A model generated the notes under the pieces. That model saw only the letters and a program-made list of their open reading frames with translations, searched no databases and was not told the origin of the DNA. The position numbers and the translations under genes were made by a program. Shown in pieces: positions 2,679 to 42,544 of a stretch of 64,000 bases of DNA. How positions within the stretch are numbered: position 1 is the first letter of the stretch; each line of letters begins with the position of its first letter. Location: positions 310,001-374,000 of IMG/VR virus record IMGVR_UViG_3300034072_000758. One strand, 5' to 3'.

Positions 2679-3065
2679 CTATAGACCGACTTTCTCAAAA
2701 AATTCATCGACCGTAAAGACATCCGGGGTCAAGAACCCATAATCATACTGATATATGTCCGAGATCGAAATTTTGTTGACGCCGATGGTCAGCTTTTCGG
2801 TCTTATTCAGATCGTCCATCTGTTCCATCAATGGTTTGATTTCAGCCTTATGATAATCGCGTTGTTTATCGGGGCGATTGATAGAGGCAAACACCTTAGC
2901 ACGATCATTTATCTGCGCTTGAAGTTCGGAGCGGCGATCATTCCAATAATGAAACGCTATTTCGAGATCGGCCAGAAATTGCGCCTTGTCGGCATACTCA
3001 ATCGGAAACACGTTAGTGTATCCAAAATCGTAGTCCGATTTGTGAACTCTCATGATAAGGCGCAT
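2679..3065 (-). CDS. Hypothetical protein
   Basis: ORF; start moved to ATG 3065 (GGAGA SD) to avoid overlapping tdk. Confidence 0.65.
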   Translation of the reverse strand: MRLIMRVHKSDYDFGYTNVFPIEYADKAQFLADLEIAFHYWNDRRSELQAQINDRAKVFASINRPDKQRDYHKAEIKPLMEQMDDLNKTEKLTIGVNKISISDIYQYDYGFLTPDVFTVDEFFEKVGL

Positions 3066-3120
3066 AAAAAATCTCCGTACATTTTCATATACGGAGACTA
3101 TAACATAGTATTGATAGTCG

Positions 3121-3666
3121 TCAAGCTGACCAGTGTTTATTACATCTGGGTTCGTAAATGTCAGAATGACCAAGCTCGATCTCTTTATCGTCCTTGTATT
3201 TCTTAAACGTTTTGTGCGCAGGTTGGCCGCATACTGAACAAATAGCTTTCAATTTTACGACTTCATCAGCCATTGCCATAAGTGTTGCCGTCAGTTCGAA
3301 GGCTTCACCCTTCCAATTAGCATCCAAACCCGTGACTACGACTTCTTTCCCGGCCTTTAGTAGACTCGCTATAAAGTCGATAACGCTGATTTCCATATTG
3401 GAGAAAAATTGAATTTCATCCAAACACACCATTTCCGCATCTGGAACTAGATTTTCCACTTCGGAGAATGATGAAATTGACATCGAGTCAACGGAAAGAC
3501 CATCGTGGCTTGTGATTTTTGACTCGGAGTAGCGATTGTCGAAGGCGGTCTTGAGGACCAAAACCGCTTTTGATTCGCCGTTTCTCGCCCATAAAATGCG
3601 CTTTAGAAGCTCGGTAGTCTTTCCGGCGAACATAGGGCCACAGATTACAGTGAGTTTTCCGTACAT
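3121..3666 (-). CDS. tdk: Thymidine kinase (type II)
   Basis: GPMFAGKTTELL P-loop, DEIQFF, GLD, CSVCG and YEPRC zinc motifs. Confidence 0.95.
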   Translation of the reverse strand: MYGKLTVICGPMFAGKTTELLKRILWARNGESKAVLVLKTAFDNRYSESKITSHDGLSVDSMSISSFSEVENLVPDAEMVCLDEIQFFSNMEISVIDFIASLLKAGKEVVVTGLDANWKGEAFELTATLMAMADEVVKLKAICSVCGQPAHKTFKKYKDDKEIELGHSDIYEPRCNKHWSA

Positions 3667-3669
3667 GAT

Positions 3670-4038
3670 TTACACCGCCGTATAAGTAACGATGGTATCT
3701 TCGGCCTTCGTTTCTACTTGCGGGTTCAATCTGTTCCATTCTTGGAGCGTTTCTTCAATCTGTGTGGCATACTTCTTGAAGTAATGTTCCAGAACATCGG
3801 TATCGGAATTGGTCGAGAAGCCATTCTTCACAATCTTCTTGTTCAAAAGATCAATGATAATGTTGCTATTAAGCAGTTGCTTGTCATTGATGCGATCAAC
3901 CACGACCGGATTTTCAAGAACTTCCCAATTCGTGTCTTGTTTCGACCAACCTTTAACCTCAGTTTTGGCACCACTGCGGGGTGTTTGGATTAGGGTGATT
4001 GTCAAAAATGGACGATTTCTAAGATAATTTTGCGACAT
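3670..4038 (-). CDS. Hypothetical protein
   Basis: ORF with AGGAG SD, adjacent to tdk. Confidence 0.7.
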   Translation of the reverse strand: MSQNYLRNRPFLTITLIQTPRSGAKTEVKGWSKQDTNWEVLENPVVVDRINDKQLLNSNIIIDLLNKKIVKNGFSTNSDTDVLEHYFKKYATQIEETLQEWNRLNPQVETKAEDTIVTYTAV

Positions 4039-4288
4039 AATGTGCTCCTATAGTTTATTAACTATAAAGTATTCTTTTCAAATATTCAATTTTATTTTAA
4101 ATAAACGCTTCATTCTAATTGTATGATTTGCTTACAATTTTTTTATGACATTTACTATTTTATAACCTGTCTTTCTTATCAAAATATGTTATGTTGTGTT
4201 CAAGGACAAACCGCCCCATGACATTGGTTATGTCTTTCGAACTCAACTCAACATCTTCGTCCACTATACCAGATTAAGGTTACTCCAA

Positions 4289-4900
4289 ATGAACCAGTCT
4301 CAAGCTCAGGCCCCCGCGTTCCACGAATCCGATTTGAAAAATATCTCGGATATGATTTCCTCCTTTGTGGGAAATAACAAAGTTGCTGTTTCGGAACTTC
4401 CGAATACACTTTCTCACATCATCAACACGTACAACAATATCCGGCTGACCGGCGTGTCGATCAATGAGGCCGACTCTGCGGTATCAGCAACAGCCGTCAC
4501 AGATGAACCCCGCACTCCGGTCGTTCCGGTCAATAAGTCGGTCAAACAAGACTACATCATCTGTCTGCTGGATGGCGGTCGCTTCAAGTCCCTCAAGAAG
4601 CACCTCAAGACCAAGTATAATCTGACACCCCAGCAATACCGTGAAATGTTCGGCCTCAAGGCAGACTATCCGATGGTCGCCCCCAGCTACTCATTGGCTC
4701 GTTCGGCACTGGCTAAGGCAAGCGGTCTGGGGCGCACCACACACGAACGTCTCGGCAAGAACAGTGGACGCAAGGTAGCGGCTTCTGCGACTACCAAGCG
4801 GACCACGAAGGCAGCTTCCCCGGTTCAAGCCAAGACTACCTCTGCTAAGACTACGGCCAAGGCCGCTCCTGCTACCAAGCGTGGCAAAAAGGCGGCTTAA
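4289..4900 (+). CDS. mucR: MucR/Ros family regulator with Lys/Ala/Thr-rich C-terminal tail
   Basis: SSFVGNNKV..ELP..I, PVVPVNKSV, ICLLDGGRFKSLKKHL...LTPQQYREMFGLKADYPMVAPSYS..RS.LAKASGLG. Confidence 0.92.
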   Translation: MNQSQAQAPAFHESDLKNISDMISSFVGNNKVAVSELPNTLSHIINTYNNIRLTGVSINEADSAVSATAVTDEPRTPVVPVNKSVKQDYIICLLDGGRFKSLKKHLKTKYNLTPQQYREMFGLKADYPMVAPSYSLARSALAKASGLGRTTHERLGKNSGRKVAASATTKRTTKAASPVQAKTTSAKTTAKAAPATKRGKKAA

Positions 4901-4910
4901 GTCTGTCATG

Positions 4911-4939
4911 AAAAGCGGGGTTAACTACCCCGCTTTTTT
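4911..4939 (+). terminator. Intrinsic terminator
   Basis: AAAAGCGGGG-TTAACTA-CCCCGCTTTTTT. Confidence 0.85.
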
Positions 4940-4975
4940 ATTGACTATTTCTATAGCTTGATCTATTTTCGTTGA

Positions 4976-5629
4976 ATGTATTCTATCAGAGTTCGCACAC
5001 GCAAGCACGAGGCATATTTTACCACGCGCTATGTGTACAAAAAAATCTGCGGTGTATACTACTCGTTTCGCTCAAAGCCAGTCTTTAATAAAACCAAGTT
5101 CGAGATCGTCCGGCTGGAAGAAGCCCAAGAGATCATGAACCGGTATTATACGATGAAGTATCTAAGCCCATATACGACCGGGCGTAGCTTCGATTTTAAA
5201 ACCCCCACGTTCGATACCATAATCGTCACTAATTTCGAACACCAATATCCTGATTTGGACATCTATTGCGGCGACAGAAAAATTCCATACGAACCACAAA
5301 TCGTTCTCAATTTGGTCCTTGAGCGATGGGTGGAAACAGCGATCACCTATGATGGTAACTTTATGCGGTTTCTGAAAGAGTGCGACATAAAACCAAACGA
5401 ACGGTTTTTATGTTTCTCGGTATCGCGTAAAGCTAAACAGTTCGTGGGTAAACCAAACACTTGGGTCACCCCTGCGACAGAAGATGAATTAGCTCTTATT
5501 CGATTGGTAGATCGAAAGCTGACCTTCTTGGATTTCAAGGAAATCATCACAGAAATGAAGCCGGTTCGGCGAGGCAAATACCGAACAGTCACCAAAAAGA
5601 TACTCGGAAATTATACCAAAACAATTTGA
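4976..5629 (+). CDS. Hypothetical protein
   Basis: 217 aa ORF downstream of a TTGACT box. Confidence 0.7.
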   Translation: MYSIRVRTRKHEAYFTTRYVYKKICGVYYSFRSKPVFNKTKFEIVRLEEAQEIMNRYYTMKYLSPYTTGRSFDFKTPTFDTIIVTNFEHQYPDLDIYCGDRKIPYEPQIVLNLVLERWVETAITYDGNFMRFLKECDIKPNERFLCFSVSRKAKQFVGKPNTWVTPATEDELALIRLVDRKLTFLDFKEIITEMKPVRRGKYRTVTKKILGNYTKTI

Positions 5630-22921: not shown

Positions 22922-22962
22922 GCTATTGACATTGGGTATAGAGGTAGCTTATAAATACATCA

Positions 22963-23292
22963 TCACTGTTTGACGACTGTGTAATAGGCTTGGTAAGACG
23001 GGAGTTCGACTCTCCCCGCCTCCACCATTGAATACATTAGTTGCTAGGTAGCCCCTAGTACGGAATATAGGATTGATCATCCTTAGCAGGTTCGAATCCT
23101 GCCCGAATGTGTTCTATTATGGGGGCGTTTTGGTTTCGATTATCGGCTGACGGACAGGAATAGGTGACGGTAAGAAACGACCGACCAATCAGTTCAAATT
23201 CATACTTGCCAACGACAACGTTGACATGAAGGACATGGCGCTCGCCGCCTAATCCATTCGGGGCTTGAGAGAGCCTAGCAACAGAATCTCTC
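22963..23292 (+). ncRNA. ssrA: Circularly permuted two-piece tmRNA (alphaproteobacterial type), tag ANDNVDMKDMALAA
   Basis: Acceptor piece ends GACGGGAGTTCGACTCTCCCCGCCTCCACCA (23027); coding piece starts GGGGGCG (23121) with G3.U70; tag 23208-23252; GGGC..GAGAGA-GCCT-AGCAACAGAA-TCTCTC pseudoknot; TTGACA and TATAAATA promoter at 22926-22957. Confidence 0.93.
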
Positions 23293-23293
23293 G

Positions 23294-23399
23294 TTCTATC
23301 TACAGAGTCCGGCCCCACAAGGGAAAGGCGTACAGACGGTTATATTGTTAGATACAGAACTTCACTTCGGTGCCTTCTGTGTGGCCATGTAACCTAGAA
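23294..23399 (+). ncRNA. Candidate structured RNA co-transcribed after tmRNA
   Basis: Nested stems TTCTA/TAGAA, TACA/TGTA, GGCC/GGCC enclosing ACAGAA/TTCTGT with a C(UUCG)G loop; no ORF; lies upstream of the terminator. Confidence 0.45.
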
Positions 23400-34827: not shown

Positions 34828-35201
34828 TGTGAATTATATTCTTTCGGGAATCGACCGCAGAGTATTGCCGCAACGAAATGATCAGCAACCTCTTGTTCAG
34901 TCACGTCACTATATACTTCAACACATGAGGTGGCGAGCAATTCCCCGGTATCATCGCGCGTATCTACGCAATAATCGTATGAAAAAATATCACCTATCAC
35001 GTTATGCTCAGGATCATAGTCCAAGATTGTGTAGGCTTGAGACGTATAATTGAAATCCTCATTGCGATTTTTCAACAGCAAGGGATCATGCTTATAGATG
35101 CGGAAATACAAATTCATATTCAAATGTGCGTATTCGTATACCGACTTACGAATGTTTTCCGGTAACTCAACACTTTGGAAGAATTTGATAATGATGTCCA
35201 T
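34824..35201 (-). CDS. Hypothetical protein
   Basis: Coupled ORF. Confidence 0.6.
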   Translation of the reverse strand: MDIIIKFFQSVELPENIRKSVYEYAHLNMNLYFRIYKHDPLLLKNRNEDFNYTSQAYTILDYDPEHNVIGDIFSYDYCVDTRDDTGELLATSCVEVYSDVTEQEVADHFVAAILCGRFPKEYNSQ

Positions 35202-35473
35202 CAGGAGATCGTAGAACGATTGTGAACGATGTAATTGTACACCGCCGTTGGCGTGATTGAAGGACCGCTCAGATAGTCAAGATCGTCTTCGGGGCCGGGT
35301 TCTTTGTAGTCGAACACATCGCTACACTTGTTGACGTTTGTTCGCTTACCGTTGGGAGACAGGATGCTCACCACGGTCTTCCCGACCTTCCAGAACCAAA
35401 TCTCGGAGCCGATCTGAATCTCGCGCTCACCCTTACCTTTGACGTGAGGCTTTTTGGGTTTCTTGCGTTCCAT
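35201..35473 (-). CDS. Hypothetical protein
   Basis: Coupled ORF. Confidence 0.65.
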   Translation of the reverse strand: MERKKPKKPHVKGKGEREIQIGSEIWFWKVGKTVVSILSPNGKRTNVNKCSDVFDYKEPGPEDDLDYLSGPSITPTAVYNYIVHNRSTIS

Positions 35474-35496
35474 GATCGTATCTTTCGGGGGAATTA

Positions 35497-35578
35497 AGTC
35501 TGGGGGACAAGTCTGACAGCTTTGTCATCATCCAATTGAAATTTTTAGAAGGAAGCGCACCAATGCGTCCCCCAGACT
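35497..35578 (-). ncRNA. Small structured RNA motif, copy 2 (3' of tRNA-Thr)
   Basis: 12-bp closing stem AGTCTGGGGGAC/GTCCCCCAGACT; core GCATT..GCTTCCTTCTAAAA...TGACA-AAGC-TGTCA-GA. Confidence 0.6.
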
Positions 35579-35579
35579 G

Positions 35580-35652
35580 TGCCGGTTGCAGGAATCGAAC
35601 CCGCGACATCTTGTTTACAAAACAAGTGCTCTACCAACTGAGCTAAACCGGC
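35580..35652 (-). tRNA. tRNA-Thr(TGT), no encoded CCA
   Basis: Full cloverleaf; anticodon arm CTTGT-TTTGTAA-ACAAG. Confidence 0.93.
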
Positions 35653-35661
35653 GTGTAAGTA

Positions 35662-35728
35662 GCAAACTAATCTAACAGCTTTATCATGCAAGGGTTGGTT
35701 TTAGAAGGAAGCACGTTAATGCGTTTGC
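35662..35728 (-). ncRNA. Small structured RNA motif, copy 1 (5' of tRNA-Thr)
   Basis: Closing stem GCAAAC/GTTTGC; same core, TGATA-AAGC-TGTTA; TAAATA at 35741-35736. Confidence 0.6.
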
Positions 35729-35796
35729 GTGATTATATTTATCAAAAAGAAAATGTAGCGTCAATTAAAATCGACTTTTATCCACATTTTCTTAGA

Positions 35797-36223: not shown

Positions 36224-37387
36224 TTAGTTGAACTCGGTGGCGTTTTTACGCAGGATGTAGTCTGGGGAGACCCACTTCCCGATTTTCCGGCCACGCAGGA
36301 GCGACCGGCCTTCGGTCACCGTCTTGATAACGATGCCTTCCCGAACGTGGATGCCTGACAGCGTATCCTTGCCGTCGCGCACGGCTTCCAGTGCCGCCAG
36401 ATCGTATTGGCCACGATACAGGACCGGGGCGACCGGAATACCCAGCTTCGCCGCCAGAGCTTCGAAAACCTCATAAGATACGAACTCGTACCCGATTTGG
36501 ATGTCGAAGATGTAGAGCGTGGGCTTCTTGAAGCCGTAGGTCAGGTCTTGGATACCTTCGCCGAAGATTTCACCGAAGACACGCACCGGCTGACCGTACT
36601 CGTCCGAGATAGCCTTGATCAGTTCACCGAAGCCGTTTTCGACCAGCGGCTTGAGCATCCGAACATAGACGTTCTTGAGCGCGTTGGCTTCGTTATCCTT
36701 GAAGACCAGCCCTTGTGCCGCCATACCCTTCGAGCCGACATACAGATTGCCGTCGAAGAACAGTTCGTCGTTATTCAGGCCGGGGACATAACCGATCTGA
36801 ACGTGAGTACCGTGAAGCTTTTCAGTCGCCACGACTTCATCCGACGAATCGAAAGTATCCGGGTAATTCTGAACGCTTTCGAAATCGTACTTGTGGGTAT
36901 TGCCCGAAATATTACAAACATCGCCCGCAAAGTTCGTAGGGACGGGTGGTTCGTACTTGGTGATACCAAGGAACTCGGCCACGTTGTCGCCTTCCAGAAC
37001 GGTCAGAATATGTTCGCCGTTCGGGCTTTCGATCACGTCCGAAACTTCGCCGCATCCCATATCGTATTTCGAAATGGGATACAGGACGCCTTGCGAGAAG
37101 ATGCCACGCAGACGCTTGGCCTTGACACGATCACCCTTCTTACCGGCGAGGAAGCCGACATTCTTTTCATGGTCCCAGAAGTCCATGAAGCGCAGAACAT
37201 CTTCGGGAAGAACGGCGGCTTCGGGAATGTAGGCTACGAGATCGCCCGCCTGATAGCGGTGAGAGCCATCTTCCAGCTTACCAGAAATACACAGAAAGCC
37301 CTTGATTTGGATGATCGACAGACGATCCGCATCCGGGTGATGATCGACAGAGAGAATCTTGGTCACTTCGACCGCAAAACTTGACAT
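36224..37387 (-). CDS. RNA ligase (DRB0094/Rnl5 family) with N-terminal OB domain
   Basis: HPDADRL, RLRGIFSQG, motif I EKLHGT, FGEIFG.GIQ, FDI, motif IV EGIVIK, K.VS..Y. Confidence 0.9.
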   Translation of the reverse strand: MSSFAVEVTKILSVDHHPDADRLSIIQIKGFLCISGKLEDGSHRYQAGDLVAYIPEAAVLPEDVLRFMDFWDHEKNVGFLAGKKGDRVKAKRLRGIFSQGVLYPISKYDMGCGEVSDVIESPNGEHILTVLEGDNVAEFLGITKYEPPVPTNFAGDVCNISGNTHKYDFESVQNYPDTFDSSDEVVATEKLHGTHVQIGYVPGLNNDELFFDGNLYVGSKGMAAQGLVFKDNEANALKNVYVRMLKPLVENGFGELIKAISDEYGQPVRVFGEIFGEGIQDLTYGFKKPTLYIFDIQIGYEFVSYEVFEALAAKLGIPVAPVLYRGQYDLAALEAVRDGKDTLSGIHVREGIVIKTVTEGRSLLRGRKIGKWVSPDYILRKNATEFN

Positions 37388-38629: not shown

Positions 38630-38703
38630 TGGAGCGGGTAGCGAGAATCGAACTCGCACGATCAGCATGGCAAGCTGACAGGCTACCACTACATCATACC
38701 CGC
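38630..38703 (-). tRNA. tRNA-Gly(GCC) with CCA
   Basis: GCGGGTA...TCAGC-TTGCCAT-GCTGA...TACCCGC-T-CCA. Confidence 0.93.
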
Positions 38704-38705
38704 GT

Positions 38706-38799
38706 AGCGGGGAATGCTTCTGTTGCCAAGTGCATCCCCAAAACTCCGGTTAGCGACAATTAAGCCGCCAGAGCCAAGACTACGTTATCGTTGTCAGTT
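38706..38799 (-). ncRNA. tmRNA-like fragment lacking the tRNA-like domain (tag frame DNDNVVLALAA* plus pseudoknot)
   Basis: Tag 38795-38760; GAGT..GGGGATGC-ACTT-GGCAACAGAA-GCATTCCC pseudoknot with the same architecture as in the main tmRNA; TAAATA at 38810-38805. Confidence 0.7.
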
Positions 38800-38842
38800 G
38801 ATTATATTTATCATAGACAAATATCAAACGCAACTAAAAAGT

Positions 38843-39214
38843 CTAATTTCTTTGACCACCATCAAGAATCAGATGAAAGAAAAAATCCTCCAACTCTTCT
38901 TCGGATTTCCAATTACGAATCTTATAACTAACGATGTCCCAATTATCCCAATCTTCGCTGGTTCGGTACAGCTTACCGTAACTTTGCCATTCTCCGCCCT
39001 TATGAGGCCCATAGGTGATGCTGATCACAAAGAACTCGTGGACAGTAAAAGTAAACCGGGTAAGACTGTGAATGTGCTCGTATATAGGTTTCTTGGAAGT
39101 CTTATGGTATCGGGCCATAATACGATATTCTTTATCGTCTACTGACAATAGATACCCATTTGGATACACATTCGTTTCCAATAGAATACCAGCAATGGCC
39201 TTGGTAATAATCAT
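38843..39214 (-). CDS. Hypothetical protein
   Basis: Coupled ORF. Confidence 0.6.
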   Translation of the reverse strand: MIITKAIAGILLETNVYPNGYLLSVDDKEYRIMARYHKTSKKPIYEHIHSLTRFTFTVHEFFVISITYGPHKGGEWQSYGKLYRTSEDWDNWDIVSYKIRNWKSEEELEDFFFHLILDGGQRN

Positions 39215-39633
39215 ACCAACATTCTAGCAGTAACTAGAAAATCGTCAAGACCTTCATAGCTCTTGGTAGTTGTGATCATACAAATTCTTCTAACGAGTTC
39301 ACGATGATCCGTAAGAATAATGTATAGGGCGTCTTTTCCGAGGTTCGCCCACTCCATGTGTAAATGGATTGAGAATTTGAATTTACCCGGAGAACTAATA
39401 TCCAATCGCCCGGTATATTTGTGATTATATGGTTTGATGTAATTCATCACCAAATCACCATTTGGCGTCTTTAAGACCCGGCGTCTGGAATCACGATCTC
39501 GAATTACATTACCGTATGGAGAGACGGGTAGTAAATCATTGTACAATTTGATCATGGCGCGGGCCAAATCAATATCACCGGGGTTCAACTCGAATAACTC
39601 ATCACCATCTTTATCCAGTTGATTGATACTCAT
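39211..39633 (-). CDS. Hypothetical protein
   Basis: GAGGGG SD right after tRNA-Ser. Confidence 0.6.
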   Translation of the reverse strand: MSINQLDKDGDELFELNPGDIDLARAMIKLYNDLLPVSPYGNVIRDRDSRRRVLKTPNGDLVMNYIKPYNHKYTGRLDISSPGKFKFSIHLHMEWANLGKDALYIILTDHRELVRRICMITTTKSYEGLDDFLVTARMLV

Positions 39634-39645
39634 AGTAAACCCCTC

Positions 39646-39735
39646 TGGCGGAAGCGGTGGGATTCGAACCCACGGAGGACTTTCACCCTCGCAGCTTTAG
39701 CAAAGCTGTGCTATCGACCACTCAGCCACGCTTCC
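39646..39735 (-). tRNA. tRNA-Ser(GCT) with CCA
   Basis: CAGCT-TTGCTAA-AGCTG, long variable arm, G73. Confidence 0.93.
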
Positions 39736-39737
39736 AT

Positions 39738-39926
39738 TTAAAAGTCGTTATTCAACGACTTCTGTTCTGTTGTCTCATACTTGTAGTTCTTTTTCAACCA
39801 GTCCCGACATATTTTCATATGCCAGTCCCGTTGATTATACGCCTTATCACTACTCAGTTCCACATAATCACTTGCGATATATTGGATAAGCTGTTCGGCA
39901 GTCAATTGATCTGTGTACTCACTCAT
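39738..39926 (-). CDS. Small hypothetical protein in the tRNA operon
   Basis: ORF between tRNAs. Confidence 0.55.
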   Translation of the reverse strand: MSEYTDQLTAEQLIQYIASDYVELSSDKAYNQRDWHMKICRDWLKKNYKYETTEQKSLNNDF

Positions 39927-39938
39927 GGACGTATCGTA

Positions 39939-40160
39939 TCATGTTAAGTCAGATTTTTCAATTTTTAATATAAGCAGTATTTTTTCATCATCGGTTAAGC
40001 TCTCAGCCATACTAATTTCCTCATATACTGCTGGACAACCGATACGAAGGGACGTTACTTCATCAAGCATAAGTTCGAACGTAAGTGTACCTCGCTCAAT
40101 TCCACTTACGTAGACTTGAATTAACATACACCAAGCTTTGAATATTTGCTCATTAGTCAT
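39939..40160 (-). CDS. Small hypothetical protein in the tRNA operon
   Basis: MTNEQIF...; ATG overlaps the CCA end of tRNA-Cys. Confidence 0.5.
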   Translation of the reverse strand: MTNEQIFKAWCMLIQVYVSGIERGTLTFELMLDEVTSLRIGCPAVYEEISMAESLTDDEKILLILKIEKSDLT

Positions 40161-40234
40161 GGAGTTCCCGATAGGATTCGAACCTACATAAGACGGGGTT
40201 GCAATCCGCCGCATAGCCTTTCTGCCACAGGAAC
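40160..40234 (-). tRNA. tRNA-Cys(GCA) with CCA
   Basis: GCGGA-TTGCAAC-CCCGT, U73. Confidence 0.9.
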
Positions 40235-40253
40235 ATAACCGGATTATACCGGG

Positions 40254-40342
40254 CGGACAATGGGGGATTCGAACCCCCGGAGGACATTACTGCCCTCACT
40301 CGCTTTCCAAGCGAGCGCGATAGACCGCTCTGCCAACTGTCC
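40254..40342 (-). tRNA. tRNA-Ser(GGA)
   Basis: CTCGC-TTGGAAA-GCGAG, long variable arm, G73 followed by CCC. Confidence 0.92.
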
Positions 40343-40600
40343 TTACTTTTGCCATATATGAGACTGTTCATCAACCTTTACCGGAAAGGTATGAACAGTC
40401 GTGCGAAAAAGAAAGTCCGATCCCATCTGACCAACAAGTCGATCAGTAAATGCTTCTGGGGTATAGTGATCGTTTACCCCAGCTAGGATCGCCGTCTTCA
40501 ATATGGCTTCGCATTCGTTGCTATCATCAAACTTATCCATATCGACAAACCATAAACGGCTATTCCGATCATTATAAGTTTCAACAACAGCATATATCAT
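40343..40600 (-). CDS. Hypothetical protein in the tRNA operon
   Basis: Coupled to the Nudix gene. Confidence 0.6.
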   Translation of the reverse strand: MIYAVVETYNDRNSRLWFVDMDKFDDSNECEAILKTAILAGVNDHYTPEAFTDRLVGQMGSDFLFRTTVHTFPVKVDEQSHIWQK

Positions 40601-41097
40601 TTTTGCCTTTCGAACCAGCTTTTAACCACATCGGTATGAGACCCGAAGCAAAGTTCTTCCGGTTCCAAAATGGCTCGGATTGCTGGCACTTCATTGGTTG
40701 GAACGAAGTCTTTCAAAACTTGTGCCATCGGAATAGGCGTCTTAGCTTCGCAAAAGGCCATCATATTACGACCGTTGTTGTATGAACTTATCAGACGAAC
40801 ATCAACCGGGTCAATAACCAGTCCAGTTTCTTCCACAAGCTCACGTACCGCAGCATGTTCGATAGAAGCGTCAGAAAGCTCTTGGAAGCCACCTACGAGC
40901 GCCCAGCCGTCCTTACAAGGTTGAATGCCTCGTTGGGCTACCAGAAGGCCCACAGAGCCTAATGGGAACGATACCGGTAAGAGAAGTACAGCAACCCCGA
41001 TTGGGTTGATGAATGTGATGTTGCCGCAGCTTGAACAAGCCTTGGGGTACTCAGTCGCGGTATGCTCGGTGCCGCAGAATTTACAGAACTTGTCCAT
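40597..41097 (-). CDS. Zinc-ribbon Nudix hydrolase
   Basis: FCKFCG..CSSCG..F.NP; WALVGGF...AAVRELVEETG. Confidence 0.88.
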   Translation of the reverse strand: MDKFCKFCGTEHTATEYPKACSSCGNITFINPIGVAVLLLPVSFPLGSVGLLVAQRGIQPCKDGWALVGGFQELSDASIEHAAVRELVEETGLVIDPVDVRLISSYNNGRNMMAFCEAKTPIPMAQVLKDFVPTNEVPAIRAILEPEELCFGSHTDVVKSWFERQK

Positions 41098-41122
41098 TTA
41101 TATCGCCAGAATTTTTACGGAG

Positions 41123-41207
41123 CGGAAGCGGTGGGATTCGAACCCACGGAACCTTACGGTTCGGAAGTTTTCAAGACTTCTGGGATAAACCTCTCCCCCA
41201 CGCTTCC
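41123..41207 (-). tRNA. tRNA-Ser(TGA), no CCA
   Basis: GAAGT-CTTGAAA-ACTTC, long variable arm, G73. Confidence 0.92.
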
Positions 41208-41214
41208 TTAAATA

Positions 41215-41421
41215 TTAGAAATGTCGTCTTCTGACTTTTCTTACTATAGAATCAACCGCTTTTTCCTCAGTCGGTTGGCCATTCACTATTATAACTACGG
41301 TGTCAGCCTGTCCACCTAAGTCAGTGACCGCCTCTTCCGCTTCGTATAATGCTTCTTTTGATGTTTCGGCGTTAATTTTAGATTTCGAACGAAAGACGTA
41401 TTCTACTTCAAATTCAGCCAT
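41215..41421 (-). CDS. Small hypothetical protein in the tRNA operon
   Basis: MAEFEVEYVF... after GAAGG. Confidence 0.55.
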   Translation of the reverse strand: MAEFEVEYVFRSKSKINAETSKEALYEAEEAVTDLGGQADTVVIIVNGQPTEEKAVDSIVRKVRRRHF

Positions 41422-41496
41422 AACACGTAGACCTTCAACACGATTATTACTCTTTTTACGTCTAACACGATGGTAAAGACTGGTCAATTTATTTTG

Positions 41497-41586
41497 TGGC
41501 GGATGGTGAGGGATTTGAACCCCCGGTTCCTTTCGGAACGCCAGTTTTCGAAACTGGTGCAATCAGCCGGACTCTGCCAACCATCC
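41497..41586 (-). tRNA. tRNA-Ser(CGA) with CCA
   Basis: CCAGT-TTCGAAA-ACTGG, long variable arm, G73. Confidence 0.93.
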
Positions 41587-41587
41587 G

Positions 41588-41662
41588 TGGACTATGATGG
41601 AATCGAACCATCGCTATCGTTGAGTTACAACGACGACCTATCCTTTACAGGTCTGATAGCCC
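41588..41662 (-). tRNA. Atypical tRNA-like RNA: Ala-type acceptor (G3.U70, A73) with nominal AAC anticodon
   Basis: GGGCTAT/ATAGTCC-A; 5-bp D stem GACCT/AGGTC; TCGTT-GTAACTC-AACGA; canonical T arm. Confidence 0.7.
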
Positions 41663-41673
41663 TTAATTTTAAT

Positions 41674-41762
41674 TGGGGGACGGGTGGGATTCGAACCCAC
41701 GGAACCTTCTACAAGACCCTCCCGCGTCAATCGGGACACCTTAAGCCACTCAGTCACCGTCC
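41674..41762 (-). tRNA. Atypical tRNA-Ser(TGA)-like gene (6-bp acceptor, C discriminator, CCA)
   Basis: GGACGG/CCGTCC-C-CCA; TCCCG-ATTGACG-CGGGA; long variable arm. Confidence 0.65.
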
Positions 41763-41767
41763 ATCAA

Positions 41768-41980
41768 TTAAACCGTCTGTTCTTCGATCAAAGACATATG
41801 CTTCCTGATCCAACGCATAAAGAACAATCCTTTATCCTTGGTCAAGAAGCGGGCAGTCCCGCAATCGGAGATCGGAACCGGAAACTCAAACCCATCTTCG
41901 CAGCGATAGATCAAGTTGCCGTCCTGATAGTGAACGAAGTTTACTTCGCCTTTTACTCTTGTTTTAATGTCAGCCATCAC
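41768..41980 (-). CDS. Small hypothetical protein in the tRNA operon
   Basis: ..GNLIYRCEDGFEFPVPISDCGTARFL..DK..FFMRWIRK; AAGGG SD. Confidence 0.7.
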   Translation of the reverse strand: MMADIKTRVKGEVNFVHYQDGNLIYRCEDGFEFPVPISDCGTARFLTKDKGLFFMRWIRKHMSLIEEQTV

Positions 41981-42000
41981 TTTACCCTTTCATTCAGTGA

Positions 42001-42084
42001 TGGTGTGTCGTGATGGATTCGAACCACCGTGCCTTTCGGATGGGGGTTACAACCCCACGCAATCAACCGCTCTGCCAACGACAC
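42001..42084 (-). tRNA. tRNA-Tyr(GTA), copy 2, with CCA
   Basis: TGGGG-TTGTAAC-CCCCA, long variable arm, A73. Confidence 0.9.
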
Positions 42085-42096
42085 ATAAAGGATTAA

Positions 42097-42220
42097 TCGA
42101 CCCCTCGCCTTCGGGCTTTTACCGCTGGTCATTAGGCTACCGGAGAGGAGTTTCCGTAGCCTCAGCTTACTATGTGCTCACCCCGTTTGGAGGCATACCC
42201 CTACTAGGTTAAAGTAAGCA
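42097..42220 (-). ncRNA. Candidate structured RNA between the two tRNA-Tyr genes
   Basis: Stems GCTTACT/AGTAAGC, AGGCTAC-GGA/TCC-GTAGCCT, GACC/GGTC; no ORF. Confidence 0.45.
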
Positions 42221-42227
42221 CTTCATT

Positions 42228-42312
42228 TGGTGTATGGTGCTGGATTCGAACCAGCGCGCCTTTCGGAACAGATTTACAGTCTGTCGGTATCGACCAACTC
42301 ACCCAACCATAC
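42228..42312 (-). tRNA. tRNA-Tyr(GTA), copy 1, with CCA
   Basis: ACAGA-CTGTAAA-TCTGT, long variable arm, A73. Confidence 0.92.
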
Positions 42313-42313
42313 G

Positions 42314-42385
42314 TACTCGGTAATGGAATCGAACCATTATCTTCGGAGCCACAATCCGACGCTCTTACCGTTGAGCTAACCAAGC
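42314..42385 (-). tRNA. tRNA-His(GTG), alphaproteobacterial type without G-1 (G1.U72, A73)
   Basis: U at -1; GCTTGGT/ACCGAGT-A; TCGGA-TTGTGGC-TCCGA. Confidence 0.9.
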
Positions 42386-42404
42386 ATAGTTATAAGATTC
42401 ACAA

Positions 42405-42416
42405 TGTAAAAGAACA
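42405..42416 (-). promoter_or_regulatory. boxA-like antitermination element
   Basis: TGTTCTTTTACA versus rrn boxA TGCTCTTTAACA, preceded by a hairpin (42415-42466). Confidence 0.5.
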
Positions 42417-42467
42417 TGTCTCATACACGATACAAGAAGAGGCTTCTTGCTTCATTAATGAGACATT

Positions 42468-42544
42468 TGGGGTGACCAACGGGATTCGAACCCGCGCTTG
42501 GAGATTCACAGTCTCTCGTGCTAACCGCTAACACTATGGCCACC
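42468..42544 (-). tRNA. tRNA-His(GTG), canonical G-1:C73 type with CCA
   Basis: G-GTGGCCA/TGGTCAC-C-CCA; anticodon loop CTGTGAA. Confidence 0.92.

What the first reader, a model, noticed from the sequence alone, without database searches (positions are those of the whole stretch)
35497..35741. Duplicated small RNA motif bracketing tRNA-Thr, with covariation and a possible pseudoknot
Seen: two copies share GCAUU..GCUUCCUUCUAAAA...AUGAyAAAGCUGUyAGA but have different closing stems. The hairpin is UGACA-AAGC-UGUCA in one copy and UGAUA-AAGC-UGUUA (G.U pairs) in the other. Its AAGC loop is complementary to the conserved GCUU. A late promoter lies just upstream. Inference: a conserved-core small RNA (ribozyme, protein sponge or antitoxin mimic) released by tRNA processing. 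By eye it does not fit hammerhead, twister or HDV-like consensus.
Basis: partly seen in the sequence, partly recalled or inferred. Interest (0 to 1): 0.65.

Follow-up and report, generated by a model that had tools for sequence, protein, structure and literature searches.

The report
Phage small RNAs paired with protein
The two repeats around tRNA-Thr are real copies of an undescribed structured small-RNA family, found in many large phages and some bacteria, that almost always sits beside one unknown ~700-residue protein and probably forms a Ro/Y-RNA-like particle with it.

Summary
The two copies exist on the minus strand (35662-35728 and 35497-35578) and bracket tRNA-Thr(UGU). They are not a private duplication. 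A covariance model finds at least 78 distinct relatives in about 40 large-phage contigs, in cultured Xanthomonas phage XacN1, and in six bacterial genome contigs. No Rfam family matches.

The shared fold is one long hairpin: closing stem P1, a 3 x 4 nt internal loop, a 9-10 bp helix H2, and a large apical loop that opens with a near-invariant UUCCUUCU. Covariation is strong (95% of cells paired against 59% in shuffles).

In 43 of 45 other loci, 1-7 tandem copies lie next to, and on the same strand as, a ~700-aa protein (PHROG 33734, a relative of NCBIfam RING_SCO0854). This protein has a helical-repeat domain plus a TerD domain, and its longest structural alignments are to Ro60. One copy carries a permuted tRNA-like insert that weakly matches Rfam YrlA. 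In this megaphage the protein gene lies 342 kb away.

Best reading: Y-RNA-like partner RNAs released from a tRNA-containing transcript. Expression and binding are untested.

The parts
35662..35728 (-). Copy A of the small RNA (67 nt), upstream of the tRNA. P1 35728-35723 pairs with 35667-35662. 5' junction GCA 35722-35720. H2 5' strand 35719-35710, H2 3' strand 35680-35672. 3' junction AUUA 35671-35668.
   Evidence: CM R2 39.2 bits, E about 1e-7. Fold.
35497..35578 (-). Copy B of the small RNA (82 nt), starting 1-2 nt after the tRNA discriminator. P1 is 12 bp: 35578-35567 with 35508-35497. 5' junction GCA 35566-35564. H2 5' strand 35563-35554, H2 3' strand 35521-35513. 3' junction ACUU 35512-35509.
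   Evidence: CM R2 54.8 bits, E about 1e-12. Inverted repeat I1. Folding z-score -3.3.
35703..35710 (-). Near-invariant octamer UUCCUUCU of copy A, at the 5' edge of the apical loop.
   Evidence: Exact in 76 of 78 distinct family members.
35547..35554 (-). Near-invariant octamer UUCCUUCU of copy B.
35579..35652 (-). tRNA-Thr(UGU) between the two copies. No CCA is encoded.
   Evidence: ARAGORN. Rfam tRNA, 75.4 bits.
35736..35743 (-). GATAAATA, a possible T4-late-type promoter box ending 7 nt before P1 of copy A.
   Evidence: Same spacing as TATAAATA before a G003 copy. The motif is enriched in intergenic DNA. Not verified.
35201..35473 (-). 90-aa ORFan gene starting 24 nt after copy B, probably on the same transcript.
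   Evidence: ORF list. No relatives found.

Best explanation
The two elements are small non-coding RNAs of a widespread, previously undescribed family. The family is the dedicated RNA partner of a ~700-residue protein made of a helical-repeat domain and a TerD domain (PHROG 33734, a relative of NCBIfam RING_SCO0854).

Each RNA is a long hairpin. The 5' and 3' ends pair (P1). A conserved 3 x 4 nt internal loop follows: GGCUA/CUUUCC in most members, ACGCA/AYUWG in the window's subtype. A second helix (H2) then carries a large loop that displays single-stranded UUCCUUCU followed by an A-rich stretch.

By analogy with Ro60 and Y RNAs, I infer two roles:
- The stem and internal loop dock on the protein.
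- The displayed pyrimidine loop recruits a third component. This could be an S1/KH-domain exoribonuclease such as host PNPase, or a purine-rich RNA target.

In this megaphage the RNAs are made from one transcript, perhaps starting at a late-type promoter just before copy A. The transcript reads copy A, tRNA-Thr, copy B, then downstream ORFs. RNase P and tRNA 3'-end processing free the two RNAs, which act in trans with the protein encoded at genome positions 2765-4984.

Shown: the family, its fold, its near-invariant octamer and its gene linkage.
Inferred: transcription, processing, protein binding and the role of the loop.
For: Family and fold:
- CM R2 finds 29 members in 11 genomes, 61 more in 27 further viral loci, 6 in cultured phage XacN1 and a fecal phage contig, and 12 in six bacterial contigs.
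- Chance loci that contain the exact 14-mer score 25 bits or less, against 29-72 bits for members.
- The 517-kb own genome has only these two hits at E<=1.
- Covariation: 88% of cells paired against 59% in shuffles, and 143 against 44 double-sided changes. An independent set gives 94.8% against 59%, with slid controls at 49% or less.
- UUCCUUCU is exact in 76 of 78 members, and in 31 of the 33 members that match neither search pattern.

Linkage to the protein:
- The gene is adjacent on the same strand in 9 of 10, 2 of 2, 26 of 27 and 6 of 6 loci.

Independent small-RNA genes rather than leaders:
- G008 has a copy with its own TTGACG-N17-TATAAC promoter and intrinsic terminator.
- G007 has a terminator between the RNAs and the ORF.
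- G003 copies have TATAAATA boxes before them and U-runs after them.
- In G002, L254 and L240 the copies lie downstream of the gene.

Likeness to Ro and Y RNA:
- The only solved structures that align about 200-230 residues of the helical domain are Ro60s: 2nvo Z 8.5 and 8.0, phage phiLo Ro60 9l5y Z 8.2 and 7.5, 1yvp Z 4.8 and 6.6.
- A G009 copy carries a permuted tRNA-like insert in its loop and gives a full-length but weak match to Rfam YrlA (19.8 bits, E 0.13).
- Published Y RNAs lie near rsr on the same strand, with at least two per species. [quoted passage not shown]
- Phage phiLo has two Yrl genes upstream of its Ro60 gene (PMC12135203).

Subtype follows protein clade: the three genomes with the ACGCA RNA subtype have proteins that group together (UFboot 89, SH-aLRT 65).
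Against: - No RNA data. No RNA run holds the region, and the contigs laid did not cover the elements in variant strains.
- The protein has no Pfam TROVE hit and no PDB sequence hit.
- The Ro60 Z-scores of about 8 do not stand clear of generic HEAT-repeat matches.
- The second domain is TerD, not vWA.
- The published Ro-binding motif GNCGAA is absent from most members.
- The YrlA match is far below its gathering score of 69 bits.
- In most genomes the RNAs lie 4-60 nt upstream of the start codon, which also fits a cis-acting leader.
- In the window's own genome the RNAs and the protein gene are unlinked.
Confidence: 0.55

Rival explanations
1. Cis-acting leader. The hairpins are operators in the 5' untranslated region of the ~700-aa protein's mRNA, giving autoregulation by the protein or a riboswitch-like sensor. 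The window copies would be displaced relics that now decorate a tRNA transcript.
For: In most loci the last copy ends 4-60 nt before the start codon on the same strand. In G006 the P1 5' arm GGGGGAC is repeated as GGGGAC at the ribosome-binding site, so the 3' arm could sequester it.
Against: - Two to seven tandem copies per locus.
- Own promoters and terminators; in G007 a strong terminator stands between the RNAs and the ORF.
- A stand-alone gene in G008.
- Copies downstream of the ORF in G002, L254 and L240.
- Both window copies keep every family feature 342 kb from the gene.
Confidence: 0.2
2. Protein-independent base-pairing small RNA. The exposed UUCCUUCU acts as a seed or anti-Shine-Dalgarno mimic that pairs with purine-rich sites (AGAAGGAA) such as ribosome-binding sites. 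Another possible target, recalled from memory only, is the GGAAGGAAG of SRP RNA domain IV.
For: The octamer is near-invariant and predicted single-stranded. This phage uses AGGAG-type ribosome-binding sites, 25-fold enriched upstream of long ORFs.
Against: - It does not explain the near-obligate linkage to one protein family.
- No complementary site with 1 mismatch or fewer exists elsewhere in the phage genome.
- The true anti-SD core CCUCC is not what is conserved.
- The SRP idea was not tested against any real sequence.
Confidence: 0.15
3. One reading: a self-cleaving ribozyme or antitoxin mimic released by tRNA processing.
For: Small structured RNAs next to phage tRNAs can be ribozymes. HDV-like theta ribozymes abut tRNA 3' ends (PMC10879173), and copy B starts 1-2 nt after the tRNA.
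Against: - No hit to HDV, hammerhead, twister, pistol or hatchet models even at E<=10.
- The fold is fully nested, without the double pseudoknot that defines HDV-like ribozymes.
- Almost all other members lie beside a protein gene with no tRNA directly next to them.
Confidence: 0.03
4. DNA-level repeats: recombination or insertion scars that bracket a mobile tRNA gene.
For: Two direct repeats flank a single tRNA gene.
Against: Pairing is kept through G.U pairs that exist only on the minus strand. The closing stems covary. The same element occurs in about 45 other loci that are not bracketing tRNAs.
Confidence: 0.02

Closest known systems
Bacterial and phage Y RNAs (Yrn1/Yrn2, YrlA/YrlB, phiLo Yrl1/Yrl2) with Ro60/Rsr
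   Same: - Size of about 60-130 nt, with 5' and 3' ends paired into a long stem that has a conserved internal loop or bulge.
- A pyrimidine-rich loop.
- Two or more copies encoded within a few hundred bases of the protein gene on the same strand.
- One variant has a tRNA-like module in the loop, with the same topology as YrlA.
- Co-transcription with a tRNA is documented for D. radiodurans Yrn2.
- The partner protein has a helical-repeat domain that aligns over about 200-230 residues with Ro60 structures.
   Different: - No Rfam Y_RNA or YrlA match for the window copies, and only 19.8 bits for the tRNA-like variant.
- The conserved GNCGAA/GGUCCGA Ro-binding motif is replaced by GGCUA...CUUUCC (ACGCA...AYUWG in the window).
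- UUCCUUCU is an invariant not known from Y RNAs.
- The protein lacks a detectable TROVE signature, carries TerD instead of vWA, and often has an N-terminal RING finger.
HDV-like theta ribozymes next to phage tRNAs (PMC10879173)
   Same: A small structured RNA directly abutting the 3' end of a phage tRNA.
   Different: No nested double pseudoknot, no J4/2 catalytic C context, and no covariance-model match. Family members are normally not next to tRNAs.
T4 stable RNAs of the tRNA cluster (species 1 and 2; recalled from memory, not tested)
   Same: Small stable RNAs of unknown function, co-transcribed and co-processed with phage tRNAs.
   Different: No sequence comparison was made here, and no known link to a specific protein.

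Membership tests
Y RNA / Y RNA-like (Rfam RF00019, RF02553 YrlA) | Match to the curated covariance models | tested here: not met
   No hit for the window copies at E<=10 and none at gathering score in nine member loci. Only the G009 variant with the tRNA-like insert gives YrlA 19.8 bits against a gathering score of 69.
Y RNA / Y RNA-like | Long stem formed by the 5' and 3' ends, with an internal loop or bulge and a large loop | tested here: met
   P1, a 3 x 4 nt internal loop, H2 and an apical loop of 25-90 nt, with covariation.
Y RNA / Y RNA-like | Conserved Ro-binding motif GNCGAA(N)G or GGUCCGA near the 5' end | tested here: not met
   61 of 78 members have GGCUA. The window subtype has GACGCA, which matches 5 of the 6 positions of GNCGAA (motif from PMC4201824).
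Y RNA / Y RNA-like | Encoded close to, and on the same strand as, a Ro60 (TROVE) gene | tested here: inconclusive
   Linkage to one protein family holds in 43 of 45 loci. That protein is only structurally Ro-like (Z about 8), and Pfam TROVE is absent.
Y RNA / Y RNA-like | Physical binding to the Ro protein and dependence on it for stability | not testable with these tools
   Needs EMSA, co-immunoprecipitation or Northern blots.
HDV-like / theta ribozyme | Nested double-pseudoknot fold with a catalytic C in J4/2, and cleavage at its own 5' end | tested here: not met
   No covariance-model hit. The covariation supports a fully nested hairpin.
Protein partner: NCBIfam NF041916 RING_SCO0854 | Score above the curated equivalog cut-off of 600 bits | tested here: not met
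   370-495 bits, E 1e-110 to 1e-148. These are relatives, not members.
Protein partner: TerD domain | TerD beta-sandwich fold | tested here: met
   2qz7 gives Foldseek E 1.8e-5 and TM 0.73, and VIA Z 16.5 over 156 residues.

The most novel reading that the evidence does not exclude
This is a new class of ribonucleoprotein shared by jumbo and mega phages and by diverse bacteria. A RING/helical-repeat/TerD protein is loaded with tandemly encoded hairpin RNAs whose invariant UUCCUUCU loop gives it specificity. It would be an RNA-guided or RNA-scaffolded system, unrelated by descent to Ro/Y RNA, acting on host RNA or in phage-host conflict.
Probability: 0.3. Interest if true: 0.85.

Novelty: new variant of a known kind. 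Interest (0 to 1): 0.74.

Why it matters
- It converts a two-copy curiosity into a covariation-supported RNA family of at least 78 distinct members that is absent from Rfam 15.
- It gives a first functional handle, an obligate RNA partner, for a widespread protein family of unknown function (PHROG 33734 and relatives of RING_SCO0854) in huge phages and in bacteria.
- The module occurs in a cultured phage-host pair (XacN1 with Xanthomonas citri) and in an isolate genome (Paenibacillus camerounensis G4). Binding, processing and phenotype can therefore be tested directly.
- If the Ro/Y analogy holds, it widens the known range of Ro-type RNA surveillance particles. If it does not, this is a new kind of RNA-protein system.

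Tried and rejected
Searches that found nothing:
The hairpin is not a family feature, so these were the wrong anchor.
- blastn against cultured phages found only tRNA-Thr or chance words.
- Synteny through the neighbouring RNA ligase failed. Its relatives in other ~550-kb phages are not syntenic and carry no element.
- The two flanking small ORFs have no relatives in the word search. That search sees only proteins of 0.55-1.75 times the query length, so fusions or fragments are not excluded.

RNA evidence:
- No RNA run holds the stretch.
- One 3,001-base lay of reads gave contigs of related strains that do not cover the elements.

Models and alternative readings:
- Plus-strand reading as promoter, ribosome-binding site and ATG was rejected. 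The plus-strand ORFs overlap the tRNA or a minus-strand gene, and the pairing needs G.U pairs on the minus strand.
- Anticodon-loop mimicry (CUUCUAA, as in tRNA-Arg UCU), CsrA sites, retron msr, CRISPR mini-array and type III antitoxin were considered and dropped, because the closing stems or the required partner genes are missing.

Protein checks without result:
- Pfam TROVE at relaxed E-values.
- PADLOC.
- Profile search against PDB sequences.

Other notes:
- No alternative genetic code was applied.

Full report
**Where the window lies.** The window is bases 310001-374000 of a 516,805-bp phage record with direct terminal repeats. The genome is 45% G+C and has 57 tRNA genes and a permuted tmRNA. 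Genes around the finding run on the minus strand. They are an OB-fold RNA ligase (36224-37387; Pfam RNA_ligase and PHA02142), a 128-130-aa ORFan, the finding itself, and then three small ORFans.

**Checking the observation.** Read on the minus strand, the locus is copy A (35728-35662), 9 nt, tRNA-Thr(UGU) (35652-35579), 1-2 nt, copy B (35578-35497), 24 nt, and the ATG of a 90-aa ORF.
- The copies are about 80% identical, with invariant blocks ACGCAUU, GCUUCCUUCUAAAA and AAAGCUGU.
- The exact 14-mer occurs only here in the window and in the whole genome.
- Copy B is closed by a perfect 12-bp stem and copy A by 6 bp. Three of the six shared positions changed on both sides and still pair.
- Rfam gives nothing, at gathering scores or at E<=10.

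**Finding relatives.** So did blastn against cultured phages and synteny through neighbouring proteins.
- The exact 14-mer alone, scanned over IMG/VR and filtered with a first covariance model, gave genuine relatives. Several were in tandem.
- A descriptor scan and a MAFFT alignment of 20 members gave model R2.
- R2 separates members (29-72 bits) from chance loci that merely contain the 14-mer (25 bits or less).
- It scores the window copies at 54.8 and 39.2 bits and finds nothing else in the 517-kb genome at E<=1.
- Further scans raised the family to at least 78 distinct sequences. These come from 11 genomes, 27 more viral loci, cultured Xanthomonas phage XacN1 and a fecal phage contig, and six bacterial genome contigs including Paenibacillus camerounensis G4.

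**The fold.** All members share the same layout:
- P1, formed by the two ends (5-12 bp).
- A 5' junction of 3 nt (CUA in most, GCA in the window subtype).
- A 9-10 bp helix H2 whose 5' strand ends in (G)CU and whose 3' strand starts AG(C).
- A 4-nt 3' junction (CUUU, AUUU, ACUU or AUUA).
- An apical loop of about 25-90 nt that begins UCCUUCU(AAAA) and usually ends A-rich.

Pair counts support this fold. On 29 sequences, 88% of cells pair against 59% in shuffles, with 143 against 44 double-sided changes, and 13 of 15 pairs show compensatory change. On an independent 61-sequence set, 94.8% pair against 59%, the covariation score is 0.905 against 0.197, and every slid control is at 49% or less. 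These alignments were fitted to the model, which inflates the counts somewhat. The slide controls and the MAFFT alignment show the same pattern.

UUCCUUCU is exact in 76 of 78 members, and in 31 of the 33 members that match neither search pattern.

RNAalifold on the two window copies alone had already proposed H2. The two folds lie within 4 kcal/mol of each other in both copies, so a conformational switch cannot be excluded. It is not a family feature.

**Context.** In 9 of 10 other genomes first found, the copies (1-7, tandem) lie directly beside a ~700-aa ORF on the same strand. The same holds in XacN1 and the fecal contig, in 26 of 27 further viral loci, and in 6 of 6 bacterial contigs. That is 43 of 45 loci.

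The RNAs look like genes in their own right:
- G008 has a copy with a TTGACG-N17-TATAAC promoter and an intrinsic terminator.
- G007 has a promoter, two copies, a strong terminator and only then the ORF, with a permuted tmRNA just upstream.
- G003 copies are each preceded by TATAAATA-like boxes and followed by U-runs.
- In G002, L254 and L240 the copies lie downstream of the ORF.

The window's genome is the exception. Its homologue (43% identical to G008's) lies at genome positions 2765-4984 with no element nearby, and the only two RNA copies flank tRNA-Thr.

**The protein.**
- The ORFs are mutually 24-46% identical.
- They belong to PHROG 33734, of unknown function.
- They are relatives of NCBIfam NF041916, the 'MXAN_6230/SCO0854 family RING domain-containing protein', below its cut-off. 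Two carry Prok-RING_4.
- An AlphaFold2 model (pLDDT 73) shows a helical-repeat domain and a C-terminal TerD beta-sandwich (2qz7: Foldseek E 1.8e-5, VIA Z 16.5).
- After TerD, the best whole-model matches are D. radiodurans Ro/Rsr (Z 8.5, 217 residues) and Ro60 of Thermus phage phiLo (Z 8.2, 227 residues). The next row is at Z 6.3.
- With the helical domain folded alone, the three Ro60 entries again give the only alignments of about 200-230 residues (Z 8.0, 7.5, 6.6). Generic HEAT-repeat fragments score the same.
- Pfam TROVE is not detected even at relaxed thresholds, and the megaphage has no canonical TROVE gene.
- ESM Atlas structure neighbours are bacterial 'TerD family' and RING_SCO0854 clusters.
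- PADLOC has no model for it, and I found no paper on the family.

The Ro60 resemblance is therefore a lead, not a demonstration.

**Why I favour a Y-RNA-like role.** Chen et al. (PMC4201824) report the following:
- Bacterial Y RNAs lie within a few kb of rsr on the same strand.
- Each studied species has at least two.
- D. radiodurans Yrn2 is made from a polycistronic precursor with tRNA-Asp.

Phage phiLo has two Yrl genes upstream of its Ro60 gene (PMC12135203). The present family reproduces each of these traits. It also includes a G009 copy whose apical loop holds a circularly permuted tRNA-like unit (T arm, acceptor closed by a loop, D arm). That copy gives a full-length though weak match to Rfam YrlA. 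The three genomes with the window's ACGCA RNA subtype have proteins that group together. This fits co-evolution but also plain common descent.

The cis-leader reading remains a serious rival. A protein-independent seed RNA cannot be excluded.

**Mechanism proposed for this locus (inferred).**
1. Transcription starts 1-2 nt before P1 of copy A, from a T4-late-like GATAAATA box. The 7-nt spacing matches that of TATAAATA in G003, and the motif is enriched in intergenic DNA.
2. RNase P cuts 9 nt after copy A.
3. tRNA 3' processing and CCA addition free the 5' end of copy B.
4. The two hairpins bind the distantly encoded protein through P1, the internal loop and H2.
5. They present UUCCUUCU to a third partner.

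None of these steps is shown by RNA data.

**Verdict.** Its structural details need correcting. The ribozyme and antitoxin ideas are not supported. The element belongs to a substantial, unannotated RNA family with an obligate protein neighbour.

Operators' notes were followed. One read-laying run of 3,001 letters was made. No alternative genetic code was used. The large protein search was not used.

Noticed in passing
window 22922-23295 (+): Permuted (two-piece type) tmRNA gene: Rfam tmRNA_permuted 97.5 bits and alpha_tmRNA 72.3 bits. In relative G007 a permuted tmRNA lies directly upstream of two copies of the small RNA and the protein gene (L156 6495-6912).
   Followed up: partly
own genome 117291-117364 (+), outside the window: ARAGORN calls a tRNA with anticodon CUA (amber-suppressor type) among the 57 tRNAs. 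This hints at possible TAG reassignment. No alternative code was applied or tested.
   Followed up: no
window 36224-37387 (-): RNA ligase fused to an OB-fold (Pfam RNA_ligase and PHA02142), about 500 nt upstream of copy A. It has more than 1,400 relatives, many on 450-570-kb contigs and one on a 1.14-Mb contig, but they are not syntenic.
   Followed up: partly
L159 6504-6634 (+) (G009 37003-37133): A family member whose apical loop holds a circularly permuted tRNA-like unit: T arm, acceptor 3' strand, a 4-nt link, then acceptor 5' strand and D arm. It gives a weak full-length match to Rfam YrlA.
   Followed up: partly
window 35479-35490 (-), just after copy B: UUCCCCCG, downstream of copy B, could pair with the GGGGG of the P1 5' arm in competition with the P1 3' arm. 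It lies close to the start of the 90-aa ORF, so it might couple RNA folding to translation.
   Followed up: no
window 35512-35528 and 35671-35687 (-): In both window copies, and in L051 copy b, the H2 3' strand can instead form a local hairpin with loop bases. The two folds differ by about 4 kcal/mol, in opposite directions in the two copies. This could be a switch or a coincidence.
   Followed up: partly
L167, L168, L171, L172, L174 and about 25 other loci from sample 3300045988: Many 72-nt matches to the pattern GGCTA..TTCCTTCT..CTTTCC in 20-45-kb contigs did not pass R2 at E<=1e-4. They may be a divergent branch of the family or an unrelated repeat.
   Followed up: no
window 38630-42543 (-): Dense cluster of 12 tRNA genes (Gly, 5 Ser, Cys, Val, 2 Tyr, 2 His), several of them abutting. 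No copy of the small RNA is present there.
   Followed up: partly
L162 1954-2450 (Xanthomonas phage XacN1, AP018399.1 about 288915-289411): The 500-nt stretch upstream of ORF396, unannotated in the GenBank record, holds three copies of the small RNA (50.8, 33.1 and 29.9 bits).
   Followed up: yes
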